This document shows positions 6,911 to 16,971 of a DNA stretch of 64,000 nt, in pieces. Within the stretch, counting starts at the first letter, position 1. Every line of letters starts with the position of its first letter. The notes under the pieces were generated by a model, which saw nothing but the letters and a program-made list of their open reading frames with translations, was not told where the DNA came from and ran no database searches. The position numbers and the translations under genes are program-made. Location of the stretch: IMG/VR virus record IMGVR_UViG_3300035156_000206, positions 62,001 to 126,000 of that record; one strand, given 5' to 3'.

Positions 6911-8137
6911 ATGAACGAGCGTCAAATCCAACTGTTTTCACACTTAAAGAACCTCGTCGCAACGACTGAAGTGTTCCTTACAAAAATCCACCAACTCGAT
7001 GACTGTTTCTTCCAGGTATTTGACTACCGCCTGGCTCGATACTCTGACTTCCTGCTGCCTGATGCGCGGGAAGCACGTGGTATCATGTTCGAAGTTGACC
7101 GTGATGGTATGCCTCTGCGGTTGGCTTGCTGGATGCCTTCCAAGTTCTTCAACCTGAACGAAAATCCAATGACGATGGACCTCGACCTGTCTGATGCTAA
7201 CATCAGCGGTGTGATGGAGAAGCTTGATGGTTCAATCATCTCGACGATGATGCACAAAGGCAAGATGATCCTGAAGTCGAAGACCTCCCTGAGCTCAGAG
7301 CACGTCGCAGTGGCACAAGCATACCTCGAAAAGAACTCGTACTTCCGTGAGATCCTAGAATACCCAACAAAGAACGGCTATTCAGTTCACATGGAGCTGA
7401 CAAGTCCCGACCTGCGCATCGTGCTGGGCTACCCAGAAGTAAAGCTGACCATACTGTCGATGCGTCGTCTGTCCGATGGTGCAATGGTGAATCGTCATAA
7501 CTTCTACGATCACTTCCCATGTGATTACCGTGATGGCTTCCAACTTGATCAATGGGTCAAAGATATGGACCCAATTCAGTTTGCTGGTAAGGGCATCCCA
7601 TTTGATAACCAAGTGACTTTGTTCAAGCTGCGAGGCGTCGATCACAATGATACCATGTACGTATCGAAGTTCATTGATGCCATCAAAGCAATGGTAGGCG
7701 TGGAGGGCTACATTGTCCGATTGGTTAATGGTGAACACATCAAGATCAAGTGCGATTGGTACTGTGCATTGCATCACACCAAGGACTCAATCTCTGCACC
7801 CCGCCGTTTGTTTGAATGCATTCTGAATGGTGCTGCTGATGACCTGAAGGCTATGTTTGCAGTTGATCCAATTACGTGTGCACGCATCGTGGAAATGGAA
7901 GACAAGGTTGTTGCAAAATATAACTCGCTTGTCAACAAAGTTGAAACGTTCTACGATAGCAATCGCTCGCTCGATCGTAAGTCATACGCGATTGCAGCTA
8001 CCGCAGAAAAAGAAGACAACCTGATGGGCTTGAAAATGGCTTTGTATTTGGGCAAGACCAACGACTACAAAGAGTTCTTCTTGAAGCACCCAGAGATGTT
8101 TGGCATCAATGCAAAGGATGAAGGTTTCCCAGAATGA
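6911..8137 (+). CDS. rnlA: T4 Rnl1-type RNA ligase
   Basis: KFFNLNE, EKLDGS adenylation motif, EGYIV, KIKCDWY..LH. Confidence 0.92.
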   Translation: MNERQIQLFSHLKNLVATTEVFLTKIHQLDDCFFQVFDYRLARYSDFLLPDAREARGIMFEVDRDGMPLRLACWMPSKFFNLNENPMTMDLDLSDANISGVMEKLDGSIISTMMHKGKMILKSKTSLSSEHVAVAQAYLEKNSYFREILEYPTKNGYSVHMELTSPDLRIVLGYPEVKLTILSMRRLSDGAMVNRHNFYDHFPCDYRDGFQLDQWVKDMDPIQFAGKGIPFDNQVTLFKLRGVDHNDTMYVSKFIDAIKAMVGVEGYIVRLVNGEHIKIKCDWYCALHHTKDSISAPRRLFECILNGAADDLKAMFAVDPITCARIVEMEDKVVAKYNSLVNKVETFYDSNRSLDRKSYAIAATAEKEDNLMGLKMALYLGKTNDYKEFFLKHPEMFGINAKDEGFPE

Positions 8138-10209: not shown

Positions 10210-11346
10210 ATGTCAATGCATCAAGGCTACGTGTGGGATCTCGAAGTACCGCGCCGGATCGGCGATGCCAAGGTGTACATTGTTGGTGGATGGGTCCGAG
10301 ACAAGTTCATGGGTTGTCCATCACAGGACAAGGACTTCCTGGTCGTGGGTGGCACTCATGAACTGATGATCGAGCATGGTTACAAGCAAGTTGGTTTGGA
10401 CTTTCCTGTATACTTGCATCCAGAATCCGGTGATGAGTACGCACTCGCTCGCACTGAACGCAAGACTGGGCCCGGTTACGGTGGCTTCAGTACTGACAGC
10501 TCCCCTACTATTACAGTAGAAGAAGATCTGATGCGCCGTGACTTGACGATCAATGCGATGGCATTGGACCTCGAGACGGGTGAACTTATCGATCCGTGTG
10601 GTGGCCGCCACGACATGAACCGGACGTTCTTGCGCCACACAAGTGATGCATTCATGGAAGATCCAGTTCGCATCCTCCGTACGGCACGATTCGCTGCCCG
10701 CTACAACTTCAACGTTCACAAAACAACTAACGACTTCATGCGTGGCATGGTACTTGCGGGTGCCATGAACGAATTGGAGCCACATCGCGTATGGGCGGAA
10801 ATGTCACGCGGCCTGATGGAACGCAACCCACGCCAACTGTTTCAAGTCCTCGATGACTGTGAAGCACTGCGGGCAATGGAGCATCCGTGGGTTGGTGGCG
10901 TATACGCATCTGGCATCTGGATGACTGGTTACCCACTCAGCCCTCTTACCCTCCCTCAACGGTTCGCATTGATCTCCGAGCACTTCAGCCCAGAAGACTT
11001 GAAGAAGGCCCGTATTCCTACAGATTGCGCGCGGTTGAGTACAATCCTGCACGAATGGAAACACAGCGTTCCATTATATGATCAGGCAACTTCAGACACC
11101 AAGTTGAGGATGTTGGCCGGAGTAGGAGCAATTGGCAAAGATCGTGCCACTGATTTGTTCCCAAGATTCATCAGCACATTCTTGGCATGGGGTGATACAC
11201 GGTTTGATCAATTTCGTATTCCACAGATTGATCGCATGCAAACCCATGCCAATCACATTAACCTCCTTGTGCCACCAGCAGATCTCCCAGTTAAGCGGAT
11301 CCCTGAGTGGATGCTCACATCAAAGCGGGAGATTGTTCGTGGATGA
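10210..11346 (+). CDS. cca: tRNA nucleotidyltransferase (CCA-adding enzyme), no HD domain
   Basis: VGGWVRD, DKDF, DLMRRDLTINAMA, EDPVRILRTARFAAR. Confidence 0.93.
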   Translation: MSMHQGYVWDLEVPRRIGDAKVYIVGGWVRDKFMGCPSQDKDFLVVGGTHELMIEHGYKQVGLDFPVYLHPESGDEYALARTERKTGPGYGGFSTDSSPTITVEEDLMRRDLTINAMALDLETGELIDPCGGRHDMNRTFLRHTSDAFMEDPVRILRTARFAARYNFNVHKTTNDFMRGMVLAGAMNELEPHRVWAEMSRGLMERNPRQLFQVLDDCEALRAMEHPWVGGVYASGIWMTGYPLSPLTLPQRFALISEHFSPEDLKKARIPTDCARLSTILHEWKHSVPLYDQATSDTKLRMLAGVGAIGKDRATDLFPRFISTFLAWGDTRFDQFRIPQIDRMQTHANHINLLVPPADLPVKRIPEWMLTSKREIVRG

Positions 11347-13740: not shown

Positions 13741-14469
13741 GTGATTCGTTTGTTAGCACTCCCCTTGGCAGTCGCGTTGGTTGCCCCAGCTCAGGCACAG
13801 TCTTTTGACAAGTGCAAGAAGTTCTTCATCAATGGCTATGTGACGGATTTCGTCAAGCCTCCTCATGGTCAGCTCAAAGACCTGTGCTTCGATTCATTCG
13901 CAGTACTCTATTCAGGCCAAACCAAGACAGCAGTGTTCGTTGTTGAGCGCCTCAACAAGGCTCAACTCGAAGACGCTTCGGACGAAGAGCGATCCAACAA
14001 GTTCTATGAAGAAGCCCGTTTGCCATCTGCATACCGGGCTACCCTTGCTGACTACAAGGGACAAGCTGGCGAACAGATGTACGACCGTGGCCACATGGCT
14101 CCAGCGGGCGATATGCCGAATGTGCAATCCATGGCTCAGAGCTTTTCCTTGGCCAACATGGTGCCACAAGCGTCGAAAAACAATCGTGGCCCATGGCGCA
14201 GCCGTGTCGAAATGGCAACGCGCAAGTATGTGATGCGCGCCAAAGGTGATGTGATCGTCTTCACTGGTCCTGTATTCGAAACGGTACAGACTCTTGGTCC
14301 AAACAAAGTGTGGATCCCAACGCACCTGTTCAAACTGGTGTATGATGTTGAAACAGGACGCTCGTGGGCACATTGGATTGAAAATACCAACGCCGCAAAG
14401 GCTGGTCCTCCAATTACTCACGAGGAACTGATGAAACGTACAGGCATTCGGTTCATTCCACAAGAATAA
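13741..14469 (+). CDS. Secreted DNA/RNA non-specific endonuclease (NucA/EndoG family)
   Basis: Signal peptide MIRLLALPLAVALVAPAQA; DRGHMAP active site; SFSLANMVPQ..NNRG.W. Confidence 0.92.
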   Translation: MIRLLALPLAVALVAPAQAQSFDKCKKFFINGYVTDFVKPPHGQLKDLCFDSFAVLYSGQTKTAVFVVERLNKAQLEDASDEERSNKFYEEARLPSAYRATLADYKGQAGEQMYDRGHMAPAGDMPNVQSMAQSFSLANMVPQASKNNRGPWRSRVEMATRKYVMRAKGDVIVFTGPVFETVQTLGPNKVWIPTHLFKLVYDVETGRSWAHWIENTNAAKAGPPITHEELMKRTGIRFIPQE

Positions 14470-14501: not shown

Positions 14502-14549
14502 CTTTACATGCCGCACGACGGCAAAATCCTTTACAACAGAAAGAACACA

Positions 14550-15245
14550 ATGAATTCATTCAAGACCAAGAATACAGTACTGTTCGCCGCCGTGCTGGCA
14601 GCGATGGTTTCAGGCTGTAGCGATCCGAAGCCGCCAGTCCAACCGATGCAACCGCAAGTTGCCATGGTACAGCAGTGCGGCCAGAATACCCAGACCGGCC
14701 AAACGGAATGCATCATGGTTCCAGCTCAAGGGCAATATCAGCAAGGCCAGTACCCGCAACAAGCACAACAAAACAACGGCATGGGTGTTGGTACCGTACT
14801 CGGTGCAGCAGCTCTCGGTGGCGCGGCGGGTTACTACGCTGGCAAGAACAGCGGCCAATCGCAACCACAATATCAACAGCCGAATGGTATCAATTCGCCA
14901 TCGACTGGCTTGCGTTACCGCAGCGACCAACAAACGCGTAGCAACTTCGTTCCAGGTCCTGGTCCAATTGGCACCCAATATCGTCAGGTTGGTCAGCCAG
15001 CAGTTCCAGTAGCGCCGGCATTCAAGCCACAAGCTGCCGCAGTGCAAGGTACCGTGAAGCCGATGTCGATTCCACCTTCCGCAGCGCGCCCAACGTTTGC
15101 GCAACCGGCGGCCGTTCGTCCAGCCTTCACTTCGGCGCCTGCTCGCACGTCGTCGTTCTCGGCTCCACCGGCCCGTTCGACTTTCACCCCAACGCGTTCA
15201 GCTCCGCGCTCGACGTTCTCGTCATCTTCCGCACGTAAGCGTTAA
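14550..15245 (+). CDS. Lipoprotein with Gln/Pro-rich and Ser/Arg-rich low-complexity regions
   Basis: Lipobox VSGC after hydrophobic segment; glycine-zipper-like GVGTVLGAAALGGAAGY. Confidence 0.8.
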   Translation: MNSFKTKNTVLFAAVLAAMVSGCSDPKPPVQPMQPQVAMVQQCGQNTQTGQTECIMVPAQGQYQQGQYPQQAQQNNGMGVGTVLGAAALGGAAGYYAGKNSGQSQPQYQQPNGINSPSTGLRYRSDQQTRSNFVPGPGPIGTQYRQVGQPAVPVAPAFKPQAAAVQGTVKPMSIPPSAARPTFAQPAAVRPAFTSAPARTSSFSAPPARSTFTPTRSAPRSTFSSSSARKR

Positions 15246-15248
15246 GCC

Positions 15249-15890
15249 ATGAGCAAAGCATGCCACATTTGCGGACACGCCGAAGGTCAACTTGGCAGTG
15301 TGTTCTGTTCGTCTGGCATGCATTTGCCAGCCCAATCTGCCTACCCTGGTATGATCATCGTGCCTGAAGTAAAGCCAGCATTGAAGCGCGCCAAACGGCG
15401 GTCTGACTTGTGCGATGCCGACTACGCCATCTTCTTTGACATTGATGGCTGCTTCCATCCCCAAGGCGCCCCAAAATGGGCTCGTGATGGTGACCTGTTG
15501 CCAACAAGTGACCCACTCTTCATCTGGGCAGAGGCATTCGAGGAGATCATCAAGCCGTACCACAACGTTCCGTTGATCTGTCACAGCATGTGGCGGATGA
15601 TCACAACGCAGGGTGTCCTGTATCGTGCATTACCACCTGTGATGCAGTCCCGTTATTTGGATTGCACCAGCGGCAATGATCGTTACGGCTCGATCCAAAG
15701 CTTTGCCGAGGCGTTCGGGTTCAAGAAGTACATCATCATTGACGACGATGCAAGCGAGTTCCCAAAGAAGCTGGACAACTTCGTTGAATGCAATTCCCAC
15801 ACAGGGATGTCCTGTTCGACGGCACAAGCATCGCTTCGCCACAAACTGCTCACTCTGTTCGGCCCGCCCCCGCCGCCAGAAGAGGACTAA
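15249..15890 (+). CDS. HAD-superfamily phosphatase (RNA-repair HAD-like) with N-terminal Zn finger
   Basis: FFDIDGCFH, HS.WR, YIIIDDD; N-terminal CHICGH..C...H. Confidence 0.75.
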   Translation: MSKACHICGHAEGQLGSVFCSSGMHLPAQSAYPGMIIVPEVKPALKRAKRRSDLCDADYAIFFDIDGCFHPQGAPKWARDGDLLPTSDPLFIWAEAFEEIIKPYHNVPLICHSMWRMITTQGVLYRALPPVMQSRYLDCTSGNDRYGSIQSFAEAFGFKKYIIIDDDASEFPKKLDNFVECNSHTGMSCSTAQASLRHKLLTLFGPPPPPEED

Positions 15891-15903
15891 ATAGTCCACA
15901 ATT

Positions 15904-15990
15904 GCGACTTGTCCCGGTACCAGCCTTCTAAGCTGATGACGTTAAATAACTGGAAGGAGTCCAGAGGTTCAATTCCTCCAGGTCGCACCA
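15904..15990 (+). tRNA. Atypical D-armless tRNA-Arg(UCU)-like RNA
   Basis: Acceptor GCGACTT/AGGTCGC, discriminator A plus encoded CCA; anticodon arm CAGC-CTTCTAA-GCTG; T arm GAGG-TTCAATT-CCTC; only 10 nt where the D arm should be; 27-nt variable region. Confidence 0.75.
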
Positions 15991-16015: not shown

Positions 16016-16468
16016 ATGCGCCTGTATTGCTTCTCCCTAACTCAACTCAAACAACTGCACCAAGGTGTGCAGAACACACACTCATCTGTCGAGCTGTTCG
16101 TCAAGTACACAAACCGTGAACAGCCGCAGCAAATGTATGACATGTTATACGACTGGGCCGTTAACCACAAAACCGCAATCTTCCTAGATGGTGGCTTTGC
16201 TTTCAATCTGGTTAACCTGCGCGATGCATTAGCGGACAGCCCATATCCATGGGCTCCGTTCCATGAAGACGAAGCGACGCTGTATGGCATCATGACGTCC
16301 ATCAGCATCGTCTTGCCAGAACGGATCTACAAAGCTGCTGAATTCGTTCGGGGCGGTGGAACACTGATGTTATCTACATCAGGGAAGGTATTCTTCGACG
16401 GTAGTGTTCTGACGCAATGGGACATCAAGTTCATCGAACTGCTGAACACATTCCGCATGGCCGTGTAA
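16016..16468 (+). CDS. Possible PTH2-fold protein
   Basis: QGVQNTH, W...HKT.I.L.GG, F.ED..L....T..SIVLP resemble the peptidyl-tRNA hydrolase 2 layout. Confidence 0.45.
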   Translation: MRLYCFSLTQLKQLHQGVQNTHSSVELFVKYTNREQPQQMYDMLYDWAVNHKTAIFLDGGFAFNLVNLRDALADSPYPWAPFHEDEATLYGIMTSISIVLPERIYKAAEFVRGGGTLMLSTSGKVFFDGSVLTQWDIKFIELLNTFRMAV

Positions 16469-16971
16469 TGTCTATTCGCTATGTTGCAGGGATAGGTGCA
16501 CGTGATGCACCTTTTCCCATATTGCAGAAGATGATTCGTATTGGCACAGAACTGGCTAATGATGGATGGCATTTGCGATCGGGTGGAGCCAAAGGTGCTG
16601 ATAGTGCTTTTGAGAAGGGTTGGACGCTTTCCAATTTCCCCAACAACAAGCAGATCTTTCTTCCCTGGAAAGGGTATAACGGCAATTCTAGTGCATTGAT
16701 ATACGCACCTCAGTCCGCTTATGATCTGATTGACAGCATGTGGGATGATGTTAAAGATCGTCCATCTGATACACGCGATTACTTCGCCCGCAACTGCCAA
16801 CAAATTCTTGGTCCCAATTTGGATGAGCCTTCTGATCTCGTGATCTGTTGGACCAAAGGTGGGAAAGTAGTTCGTGGTACTGGCAGGGCAATGCAAGTGG
16901 CCATGAAGTACGACATTCCCATTGTCAACCTGGCTGTAGAAGACTTCAATCCTACATTGTTCGGCTTCTAA
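16468..16971 (+). CDS. SLOG/DprA-like nucleotide-binding protein
   Basis: AGIGAR, LRSGGAKGAD.AFE.G, IFLPW, ARNCQQILG, ICWT..G...GT..A. Confidence 0.8.
   Translation: MSIRYVAGIGARDAPFPILQKMIRIGTELANDGWHLRSGGAKGADSAFEKGWTLSNFPNNKQIFLPWKGYNGNSSALIYAPQSAYDLIDSMWDDVKDRPSDTRDYFARNCQQILGPNLDEPSDLVICWTKGGKVVRGTGRAMQVAMKYDIPIVNLAVEDFNPTLFGF

What the first reader, a model, noticed from the sequence alone, without database searches (positions are those of the whole stretch)
15885..15990. D-armless tRNA-Arg(UCU)-like RNA with a displaced D-loop motif and its own late promoter
Seen: 7-bp acceptor, discriminator A and encoded CCA; canonical CU-UCU-AA anticodon loop; T arm with TTCAATT. Only 10 nt (15911-20) separate acceptor and anticodon stems, while a 27-nt variable region carries TAACTGGAAGGAG, which resembles a bacterial D loop (AACTGGATAG). 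CCGGT (15914-18) can pair with ACTGG (15949-53). A TAAATA motif in a small palindrome sits 10 nt upstream. Inference: a topologically rearranged tRNA that may still form the elbow, evade anticodon or elbow-recognising nucleases, act as a decoy, or be packaged in virions.
Basis: partly seen in the sequence, partly recalled or inferred. Interest (0 to 1): 0.72.

Follow-up and report, generated by a model that had tools for sequence, protein, structure and literature searches.

The report
Rewired phage arginine tRNA, overlooked
This 87-base gene in a soil-crust jumbo phage belongs to a widespread but unannotated class of phage arginine tRNAs in which the usual D hairpin is replaced by a long-range helix and a pseudoknot, so standard tRNA finders miss it in hundreds of sequenced phages.

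Summary
Window 15904-15990 (+) has a paired acceptor stem, discriminator A, encoded CCA, a CU-UCU-AA anticodon loop and a TTCAATT T loop. Only 9 nt separate the acceptor and anticodon stems.

ARAGORN finds nothing. Rfam tRNA scores 19.2 bits (cut-off 29) and tRNA-Sec 31.8 bits (cut-off 47).

It is not a one-off. I collected 46 distinct homologues from viral contigs. BLAST with two family members matches 341 and 57 cultured-phage records: T5-like Vibrio, T4-like Acinetobacter, ME3, Aeromonas, Escherichia Av-05 and others. In every row shown the match is unannotated or labelled "hypothetical protein".

Covariation supports five helices:
- an 8-bp acceptor stem with a 4-bp T stem (8/4);
- the anticodon stem;
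- a short crossing helix V, which makes a pseudoknot.

An invariant GGA follows helix P. All class members carry Arg anticodons (UCU, rarely CCU). In cultured phages the gene sits inside tRNA clusters, and those genomes show no canonical tRNA-Arg(UCU).

Best reading: a working, host-charged tRNA-Arg with a rewired core. The "own late promoter" is unsupported. Nuclease evasion, decoy and packaging ideas are untested, as are expression and charging.

The parts
15884..15897 (+). Small hairpin GGACT-AAAT-AGTCC. It is not shown to belong to the tRNA.
   Evidence: Sequence. TAAATA is not enriched genome-wide. No promoter-like site.
15904..15911 (+). Acceptor stem, 5' strand, 8 nt (GCGACTTG).
   Evidence: Pairs with 15979-86. 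All 8 pairs show double changes and 99% of cells are paired on A3. The 8th pair forms in 33 of 34 rows.
15912..15913 (+). 2-nt connector (TC).
   Evidence: Alignment A3 columns 11-12.
15914..15918 (+). Helix P, 5' strand (CCGGT). It leads through A15919 directly into the anticodon stem. Inferred to take the place of the canonical D-stem 3' strand (22-25).
   Evidence: Pairs with 15949-53. 5 of 5 pairs have compensatory changes; 84-86% of cells paired. Own-partner helices are always at least 5 bp; cross-sequence mean is 3.7 bp.
15919..15919 (+). Conserved A between helix P and the anticodon stem (position-26-like).
   Evidence: A in 41 of 46 distinct homologues.
15920..15936 (+). Anticodon arm: 5-bp stem (C15920-A15936 mismatched here) and loop CTTCTAA. 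Anticodon UCU at 15927-29.
   Evidence: Loop invariant except position 34, which is U or C. Stem 99% paired with double changes at all 5 pairs.
15937..15940 (+). Helix V, 5' strand (T + GAC).
   Evidence: GAC pairs with GTC 15959-61. Across the family the strands covary (TACG/CGTG, TAGC/GCTG, GGCAT/ATGCC, TGAC/GTCA, CGACC/GGTCG and others); 74% of cells paired, 3 of 4 pairs with double changes. Only 3 bp in the window.
15941..15948 (+). A-rich linker (GTTAAATA) between V 5' and P 3'.
   Evidence: A-rich in all homologues.
15949..15953 (+). Helix P, 3' strand (ACTGG). Inferred equivalent of the canonical D-stem 5' strand (10-13).
15954..15958 (+). Displaced D-loop-like motif AAGGA. GG is the candidate G18-G19 elbow contact and the following A the candidate A20 ArgRS identity base.
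   Evidence: A-W-G-G-A is present in every class-B homologue by inspection of A3. The functional assignment is inference.
15959..15963 (+). Helix V, 3' strand (GTC) plus a 2-nt connector (CA).
15964..15978 (+). T arm: 4-bp stem GAGG/CCTC and loop TTCAATT.
   Evidence: T loop TTCRATT is invariant. Stem 97% paired.
15979..15990 (+). Acceptor stem 3' strand (CAGGTCGC), discriminator A15987 and encoded CCA.
   Evidence: About 38 of 46 homologues encode an intact CCA, and the discriminator varies (A 18, U 15, G 12, C 1).

Best explanation
The element is a phage-encoded tRNA-Arg(UCU) gene of a non-canonical structural class, which I call class B.

Structure:
- The acceptor/T branch keeps its 12 bp, split 8/4.
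- There is no D hairpin.
- A 5-nt strand just 5' of the anticodon stem pairs with a 5-nt strand about 30 nt downstream (helix P). Helix P would stack on the anticodon stem as a D stem does.
- The downstream strand is followed by A-W-G-G-A. This can supply the GG elbow contact to the T loop and the A20-type ArgRS identity base.
- That whole segment is the loop of a short variable-arm-like helix V, so P and V cross and form a pseudoknot.
- In effect, the D-stem 5' strand and D loop have been moved from before the anticodon arm to after it.

Shown: the family, its helices, the conserved loops, and its position in tRNA clusters.

Inferred:
- The RNA is cut out of a polycistronic transcript by RNase P and 3' processing.
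- It is charged by the host ArgRS; the phage encodes none.
- It decodes AGA and perhaps AGG.
- The rewired core still gives an L shape.

Why phages keep this design is not known. Resistance to host tRNA-directed nucleases or modification enzymes is a reasonable but untested idea.
For: 1. Family and score. Model R1 scores the element 84.8 bits, within a family range of 48-96 bits; 67 hits, 46 distinct.

2. Covariation. On MAFFT alignment A1, 85.1% of cells are paired against 63.1% shuffled, with covariation score 0.624 against 0.206 (0 of 500 shuffles). Slid controls give 37-48%. On alignment A3, 92.5% are paired, the acceptor stem is 99% paired over 8 bp, and P and V both show double changes.

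3. Anticodon. In an anticodon-agnostic scan, every rearranged hit carried UCU or CCU. Loop positions 32, 33 and 35-38 are invariant.

4. Ends and motifs. About 38 of 46 homologues encode an intact CCA. The GGA motif and the T loop TTCRATT are invariant.

5. Gene context in cultured phages. The gene lies inside tRNA clusters on the same strand. It is 15 nt after tRNA-Thr in Acinetobacter phage KARL-1, between tRNA-Cys and tRNA-Thr in Escherichia phage Av-05, just before tRNA-Met in ME3, and in tandem CCU+UCU copies in the 115,739-bp contig that one search identifies as Aeromonas phage AhSzw-1.

6. No canonical copy. No canonical-type tRNA-Arg(UCU) pattern occurs in KARL-1, PG07, Av-05, ME3 or that same 115,739-bp contig, nor in this genome. 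This genome has about 30 other tRNAs, including Arg(ACG).

7. Neighbourhood in the window. Nearby genes are T4-type RNA ligase 1, a CCA-adding enzyme and an RNA-repair-type HAD protein.

8. Breadth. BLAST with two family members matches 341 and 57 cultured-phage records. Only about 7 of 185,579 species genomes hold a class-B copy.
Against: - No transcription, processing or aminoacylation data exist for this or any family member. No RNA run was listed for this metagenomic phage.
- The window copy has a C-A mismatch at the top of the anticodon stem and only 3 bp in helix V.
- The single-sequence MFE fold does not recover helix P, and its z-score is only -1.37.
- In this genome the gene is solitary. 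It lies about 70 kb and 180 kb from the two tRNA clusters and on the opposite strand.
- AGA and AGG are rare in this genome, at 4.6% and 7.2% of Arg codons, so demand is modest.
- The genome is estimated 84% complete, so a canonical Arg(UCU) gene could lie in the missing part.
- The 3D equivalence to a D arm is inference only.
Confidence: 0.75

Rival explanations
1. It is a tRNA-like decoy or regulator that is not used for decoding. It would keep the anticodon arm, acceptor end and T arm so as to bind or titrate a host factor, such as an Arg-specific anticodon nuclease, a tRNA-sensing defence protein or a modification enzyme.
For: The core is non-canonical. The window copy is solitary and sits among RNA-repair-type genes: Rnl1, a CCA-adding enzyme, a nuclease and HAD_SAK_2. 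AGA and AGG are rare in this genome. A second tRNA-like RNA without an anticodon loop exists in the same genome.
Against: The full anticodon loop, the 12-bp acceptor/T branch that EF-Tu needs, the encoded CCA and the GGA motif are all conserved. The gene replaces, rather than accompanies, a canonical tRNA-Arg(UCU) in five complete phage genomes. It sits in ordinary tRNA clusters.
Confidence: 0.12
2. It is an allo-tRNA-like 8/4 species charged with a non-cognate amino acid, for example serine through its variable-arm-like helix. It would then recode AGA/AGG.
For: It has the 8/4 branch. The best Rfam hit is tRNA-Sec. Published allo-tRNAs include species with AGA/AGG anticodons (PMC5389517).
Against: Allo-tRNAs and tRNA-Sec keep a long D stem with a tetraloop, which is absent here. 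Helix V is only 3-5 bp and its loop is tied up in helix P. The discriminator is highly variable, whereas, from my own knowledge, bacterial tRNA-Ser usually has G73. The conserved A after GG and C35 fit the ArgRS identity rules, again from established knowledge.
Confidence: 0.05
3. It is a decaying tRNA pseudogene, an attachment-site remnant, or part of a small protein-coding ORF, as many records annotate it.
For: tRNA finders reject it. Several GenBank records place a "hypothetical protein" over it. A 43-codon ORF overlaps it.
Against: Compensatory changes in five helices across 46 distinct sequences from unrelated phage families cannot come from decay or from protein coding. Carriers include T4-like (Straboviridae) and T5-like (Demerecviridae) phages, groups I know as strictly lytic. 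Integrases were not searched for.
Confidence: 0.03

Closest known systems
Canonical bacterial and phage tRNA-Arg(UCU) (Rfam RF00005 tRNA)
   Same: Acceptor stem, discriminator, CCA, a 5-bp/7-nt anticodon arm with the CU-UCU-AA loop, a T loop TTCRATT, a GG-A motif and a position inside phage tRNA clusters.
   Different: No D hairpin; only 9 nt lie between the acceptor and anticodon stems. The D-stem-like helix is formed with a strand located after the anticodon arm. The branch is 8/4 instead of 7/5, and there is a pseudoknot. RF00005 scores it 19.2 bits against a cut-off of 29, and ARAGORN finds nothing.
Allo-tRNAs (8/4, 9/3) and bacterial tRNA-Sec (Mukai et al. 2017, PMC5389517; RF01852)
   Same: A 12-bp acceptor/T branch split 8/4. 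Extra sequence in the variable region. Found partly in phages. tRNA-Sec is the best, though sub-threshold, Rfam hit at 31.8 bits.
   Different: Those tRNAs keep a D stem-loop (a long stem with a tetraloop) and a free long variable arm. Here the D hairpin is absent and the variable-arm loop is used to build the D-like helix. The anticodon is Arg, not UCA or Ser-type.
D-arm-lacking mitochondrial tRNAs, e.g. metazoan mt-tRNA-Ser(AGY/UCU) (review PMC7609411)
   Same: No D hairpin between the acceptor and anticodon stems. Some of them also carry a UCU anticodon.
   Different: Those are truncated, flexible RNAs with a short replacement loop. This one is full length (87 nt) and keeps a covarying D-like helix, a GG motif and a normal T loop through rewiring. 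It is a phage gene that would use bacterial translation factors.
Circularly permuted and split tRNA genes (Cyanidioschyzon, Archaea; PMC3978253, PMC3218864)
   Same: The order of tRNA segments along the gene differs from the canonical order.
   Different: There the permutation is in the gene only, and processing restores a normal cloverleaf. Here no BHB motif or processing signal was seen by eye (not searched for systematically). The covariation fits a mature RNA that itself has the rearranged connectivity.
Pseudoknotted viral tRNA-like structures (TYMV-type TLS)
   Same: A tRNA mimic that uses a pseudoknot to achieve a tRNA-like shape.
   Different: TLS elements are 3' ends of plant RNA virus genomes with the pseudoknot in the acceptor arm. 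This is a free-standing DNA-phage gene with a normal acceptor stem and the pseudoknot in the D/variable core.

Membership tests
tRNA (canonical cloverleaf, RF00005) | Acceptor stem with discriminator and 3' CCA | tested here: met
   8-bp stem 15904-11 with 15979-86, A15987 and CCA 15988-90. 99% of cells paired across the family.
tRNA (canonical cloverleaf, RF00005) | Anticodon arm: 5-bp stem, 7-nt loop with U33 and a purine at 37 | tested here: met
   Loop CTTCTAA. Invariant in 46 homologues except position 34.
tRNA (canonical cloverleaf, RF00005) | T arm with a TTCRANY loop | tested here: met
   TTCAATT with a 4-bp stem.
tRNA (canonical cloverleaf, RF00005) | D stem-loop hairpin between position 9 and position 26 | tested here: not met
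   Only 9 nt (15911-19) lie between the stems, which leaves no room for a hairpin. The Rfam alignment deletes the D arm.
tRNA (canonical cloverleaf, RF00005) | Score above the family threshold, or detection by tRNA finders | tested here: not met
   RF00005 scores 19.2 bits against 29. ARAGORN finds 0 genes in the window. Rfam at gathering thresholds gives 0 hits.
tRNA-Sec (RF01852) | UCA anticodon, long 6-bp D stem with a 4-nt loop, score of at least 47 bits | tested here: not met
   Anticodon is UCU, there is no D hairpin, and the score is 31.8 bits.
Allo-tRNA (8/4) | 8-bp acceptor plus 4-bp T stem | tested here: met
   G15911-C15979 is the 8th pair and forms in 33 of 34 rows. The 49-65 pair is mismatched in most rows.
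Allo-tRNA (8/4) | Sec-like D stem-loop and a free long variable arm | tested here: not met
   No D hairpin. The loop of the variable-arm-like helix V is base-paired to 15914-18 (definition from PMC5389517).
Class-B rearranged phage tRNA-Arg (defined here by model R1) | 8/4 branch, helix P enclosing the anticodon arm, the A-W-G-G-A motif and an Arg anticodon | tested here: met
   84.8 bits, E about 1e-20. All helices and motifs are present.
Functional tRNA-Arg | Transcribed, end-processed, arginylated and used on the ribosome | not testable with these tools
   No RNA run was listed. The ArgRS-RNA complex job was not folded.

The most novel reading that the evidence does not exclude
Phages of many lineages have replaced their AGA/AGG tRNA with a topologically rewired, pseudoknotted tRNA-Arg. 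It remains a substrate for host ArgRS, EF-Tu and the ribosome. It is no longer recognised by host factors that read the D arm or the tRNA core, such as tRNA-directed defence nucleases or modification enzymes. On this reading it is a structural anti-defence adaptation, and it shows that the canonical cloverleaf connectivity is not required for translation in bacteria.
Probability: 0.3. Interest if true: 0.9.

Novelty: new variant of a known kind. Interest (0 to 1): 0.8.

Why it matters
If these RNAs are charged and used, bacterial translation accepts a tRNA whose D-arm strands are wired in a different order and held by a pseudoknot. That would be a new entry in the short list of natural non-canonical tRNA architectures.

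Three practical consequences follow:
- tRNA-Arg(UCU/CCU) is systematically missing from phage annotations, including hundreds of cultured T5-like, T4-like and jumbo phages. Codon-usage and tRNA-complement analyses of these phages are therefore biased.
- The covariance model built here, or one like it, could be added to tRNA finders and Rfam.
- The design may be useful as a naturally orthogonal or nuclease-resistant scaffold. It is also directly testable in tractable systems such as E. coli phage Av-05 and Acinetobacter phage KARL-1.

Tried and rejected
- ARAGORN on the window found 0 genes. A permissive ARAGORN run over the whole genome listed no tRNA at genome 77,904-77,990, the element's position.
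- Rfam at gathering thresholds gave 0 hits.
- My first over-constrained pattern scan returned nothing because I set the gap wrongly.
- Two searches for sequencing runs found only the DNA metagenome of origin (biocrust). No RNA run was listed.
- The complex-prediction job with E. coli ArgRS and the window RNA was not folded by the tool. It is no evidence either way.
- The single-sequence MFE fold does not recover helix P. It proposes a local CUGG/CCAG hairpin that, checked by eye against ME3 only, has no counterpart there.
- The late-promoter idea is rejected. TAAATA is not enriched, it overlaps a stop codon, and there is no sigma-70-like site.
- No synteny was found between the tRNA and the HAD gene in other loci. 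Only occasional CCA-enzyme or Rnl1 neighbours appear.
- No ArgRS gene is present in the phage.
- Seven literature searches and two reviews of non-canonical tRNAs turned up no description of this architecture. The library is incomplete, so prior publication cannot be excluded.
- Most genome-contig hits in Campylobacteraceae and Helicobacter looked like tmRNA 3' ends, not this family.

Full report
**What is at the coordinates**

The window is bases 62,001-126,000 of a single 291,967-bp contig with 48% GC. It is a virus record estimated 84% complete and assembled from a biocrust metagenome. The genome carries about 30 canonical tRNA genes and a tmRNA. They lie in two clusters, at 2-9 kb and 258-272 kb, all on the minus strand.

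The element lies at window 15904-15990 on the plus strand. It sits in a 125-nt gap between two plus-strand ORFs, 15249-15890 and 16016-16468. These are the acceptor pairing, discriminator A, encoded CCA, the CTTCTAA anticodon loop with TCT, the TTCAATT T loop, the short linker, the long region before the T arm, the CCGGT/ACTGG complementarity, and the TAAATA inside a small palindrome.

**Standard detectors reject it**

- ARAGORN finds no tRNA in the window.
- Rfam at gathering thresholds finds nothing.
- At permissive thresholds the best hit is tRNA-Sec at 31.8 bits (cut-off 47), with the D arm deleted in the alignment.
- The general tRNA model RF00005 gives 19.2 bits, E = 0.03 (cut-off 29).

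**It belongs to a large family**

A sensitive BLAST against cultured phage genomes found one unannotated homologue, in Acinetobacter jumbo phage ME3, just upstream of tRNA-Met. Pattern scans of IMG/VR then returned well over a hundred loci. Parsing them shows many tRNA-Arg(UCU)-like genes with three shared traits: a perfect acceptor stem, only 7-11 nt before the anticodon stem, and 18-35 nt between the anticodon and T stems.

They fall into at least three designs. The window belongs to the one I call class B.

I built a covariance model (R1) from 34 class-B sequences, the window's element among them. It scores the window element 84.8 bits (E about 1e-20) and finds 67 copies, 46 of them distinct, in the fetched loci at 48-96 bits. 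In the window's own genome this is the only strong hit.

**Structure supported by covariation**

On a structure-blind MAFFT alignment of 45 distinct sequences (A1), the proposed pairs are formed in 85.1% of cells. Shuffles give 63.1% (0 of 500 reach the observed value) and slid partners give 37-48%. The covariation score is 0.624 against 0.206. On the model-guided alignment A3 the figures are 92.5% against 66.6%.

| Helix | Window coordinates | Support |
|---|---|---|
| Acceptor, 8 bp | 15904-11 with 15979-86 | 99% paired; all 8 pairs show double changes |
| P | 15914-18 with 15949-53 | 84-86% paired; 5 of 5 pairs with double changes |
| Anticodon stem | 15920-24 with 15932-36 | 99% paired |
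| V | 15938-40 with 15959-61 | 74% paired; 3 of 4 pairs with double changes |
| T stem, 4 bp | 15964-67 with 15975-78 | 97% paired |

- **Acceptor.** The 8th pair is G15911-C15979. It forms in 33 of 34 rows as G-C, A-T or T-A, while the canonical 49-65 pair is mostly mismatched. The branch is therefore 8/4.
Each sequence's own partner always gives at least 5 bp, against a cross-sequence mean of 3.7 bp.
- **Helix V.** Many distinct complementary strand pairs occur across subgroups. Own-partner helices average 3.7 bp against 3.0 bp for cross pairs. In the window V has only 3 bp.
- **Pseudoknot.** P and V cross, so the core is a pseudoknot.

Conserved single-stranded features:
- an A between P and the anticodon stem (41 of 46);
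- an A-rich linker before P 3';
- an A-W-G-G-A motif right after P 3', present in all members by inspection;
- the T loop TTCRATT, invariant;
- an encoded, intact CCA in about 38 of 46, with a variable discriminator.

**Interpretation of the topology (inference)**

The 5' strand of P runs straight into the position-26-like A and the anticodon stem. That is the polarity and position of the canonical D-stem 3' strand (22-25). The 3' strand of P is followed by A-W-G-G-A, as the canonical D-stem 5' strand (10-13) is followed by A14...G18-G19-A20.

The RNA therefore looks like a tRNA in which the D-stem 5' strand plus D loop has been moved from before the anticodon arm to after it. There it sits as the loop of a short variable-arm-like helix. 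In canonical tRNA the new chain connections (8/9 to 21/22, 44/45 to 10, and 20/21 to 46-48) join residues that are spatial neighbours. An L shape with a GG-T-loop elbow is therefore plausible, but I could not model it.

The A after GG and C35 match the known ArgRS identity set (A20, C35). That rule comes from established knowledge and was not tested here.

**Evidence that it acts as a tRNA-Arg**

- In a scan that did not fix the anticodon, all rearranged class-B hits carried UCU or CCU.
- BLAST with two family members matches 341 and 57 cultured-phage records. They include T5-like Vibrio phages such as PG07, T4-like Acinetobacter phages such as KARL-1 and Kimel, ME3, Aeromonas AhSzw-1, Escherichia Av-05, Salmonella Arash and Salicola SCTP-2. 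In every listed row the match is unannotated or lies under a "hypothetical protein".
- In KARL-1 the gene starts 15 nt after tRNA-Thr, inside the tRNA cluster. In Av-05 it lies between tRNA-Cys and tRNA-Thr. In the 115,739-bp contig that one search identifies as AhSzw-1, a CCU and a UCU copy are in tandem.
- Five complete carrier genomes contain no canonical-type Arg(UCU) pattern. Neither does this genome, which has Arg(ACG).
- The phage has no ArgRS gene, so the host enzyme would have to charge the RNA.
- Cellular genomes almost never carry it. About 7 of 185,579 species representatives do, mostly MAG contigs. One Flavobacteriales MAG contig holds the closest relative of the window copy.

**The window's context**

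The gene is solitary and lies among RNA-repair and tRNA-maintenance genes:

| Coordinates | Gene |
|---|---|
| 6911-8137 | T4-type RNA ligase 1 |
| 10210-11346 | CCA-adding enzyme |
| 13741-14469 | non-specific endonuclease |
| 15249-15890 | HAD domain of the "Swiss Army Knife" RNA-repair type, immediately upstream |
| 16016 onward | a hydrolase, a DprA-like protein, MazG, PhoH and ThyA |

This is suggestive of a tRNA-damage theme. The arrangement is not conserved in other carriers.

AGA and AGG make up 4.6% and 7.2% of Arg codons in long ORFs.

**The promoter claim**

- TAAATA (15888-93) overlaps the upstream ORF's TAA stop codon and sits in the loop of a 5-bp hairpin.
- The hexamer is not enriched in the genome: 72 and 47 occurrences on the two strands, against about 88 expected per strand.
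- No sigma-70-like site is found nearby.
- The gene lies 13 nt after one same-strand ORF and 25 nt before the next.

Co-transcription followed by nucleolytic processing is the simpler reading.

**Weaknesses**

- There are no expression or charging data. No RNA runs were listed, and the ArgRS-RNA complex job was not folded.
- The window copy has a C-A mismatch at 27-43 and a weak helix V.
- Thermodynamic folding alone does not recover P.
- The genome is incomplete.

**Comparison with known kinds, and novelty**

| Known kind | Shared | Different |
|---|---|---|
| Allo-tRNAs and tRNA-Sec | 8/4 branch | those keep a D hairpin |
| Mitochondrial D-armless tRNAs | no D hairpin | those lack the rewired D-like helix |
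| Permuted tRNA genes | segment order differs along the gene | processing restores a normal cloverleaf |
| TYMV-type TLS | pseudoknotted tRNA mimic | the pseudoknot is in the acceptor arm |

Seven literature searches found no description of this architecture, and Rfam 15 has no model for it. I therefore rate it a new variant of a known kind. There is a residual chance, roughly one in six by my judgement, that it has been described in a source I could not search.

**Verdict**

| Claim | Confidence |
|---|---|
| Member of a conserved, structured, phage-borne tRNA-Arg-like family with helix P | 0.97 |
| It works as a chargeable, decoding tRNA-Arg | 0.75 |
| The rewiring is an anti-defence adaptation | 0.3 |
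| It has its own late promoter | not supported |

Noticed in passing
window 6911-8137, 10210-11346, 13741-14469, 15249-15890: A run of same-strand genes for T4-type RNA ligase 1, a CCA-adding tRNA nucleotidyltransferase, a non-specific endonuclease and an RNA-repair-type HAD protein (HAD_SAK_2) lies just upstream of the tRNA. It looks like a tRNA repair and maintenance module. No polynucleotide kinase was recognised; ORF 14508-15245 has no Pfam match at E ≤ 0.01 and only a weak PHROG of unknown function.
   Followed up: partly
own genome G000:C1:267889-267966 (-), outside the window; L169:1498-1581 (-): A second odd tRNA-like RNA lies inside the tRNA cluster. It has a 7-bp acceptor stem, ACCA, a normal T arm and a long-range CCCGC/GCGGG helix. 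In place of a 7-nt anticodon loop it has a short hairpin with a 4-nt loop. ARAGORN and RF00005 (E ≤ 10) miss it; model R1 gives 24.9 bits.
   Followed up: partly
L004-L117, e.g. L054, L107, L013, L074 (class A); L035, L058, L049 (class C): Two other rearranged designs of phage tRNA-Arg(UCU) exist. Class A has an 8-nt linker: a 6-nt continuous 5' strand pairs with two 3-nt segments that flank a TAAYNGGA D-loop-like bulge, and both segments covary in 25 sequences. Class C has a 7-nt linker and was not analysed in detail. Both use a 7/5 branch, and many class-A copies lack an encoded CCA.
   Followed up: partly
L133, L078:6847-6936(-), L107:6559-6651, L115:11279-11370(-), L083:7163-7246, L060:440-530, L102:20-116: Class A/C-like rearranged tRNA candidates carry other anticodons: ACG and UCG (Arg), UAU and GAU (Ile), UCA (which reads UGA) and possibly GUA (Tyr). 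The rewiring may therefore not be limited to AGR-decoding tRNA-Arg.
   Followed up: no
L148:1449-1536 and 1543-1627 (115,739-bp IMG/VR contig; AhSzw-1 has the same length): Two class-B genes sit in tandem, 6 nt apart, one with anticodon CCU and one with UCU.
   Followed up: no
L181, L189, L192 (one Nitrospirota MAG, three loci): Three identical UCU-anticodon tRNA-like sequences have a 32-nt variable region and an unusual 5' half. They are not class B and may be allo-tRNA-like.
   Followed up: no
own genome G000:C1:268847-268922, 269241-269315, 269144-269217 (-): Several marginal or odd tRNA-like sequences lie in the main cluster. One is called by ARAGORN with a 2-nt "anticodon". The others are found only in ARAGORN's permissive mode or by model R1.
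   Followed up: no
window 16016-16468 and 16417-16971: The ORFs downstream of the tRNA (a PHROG hydrolase and a DprA-like protein) overlap by 52 nt in different frames. The start of the second may be mis-set.
   Followed up: no
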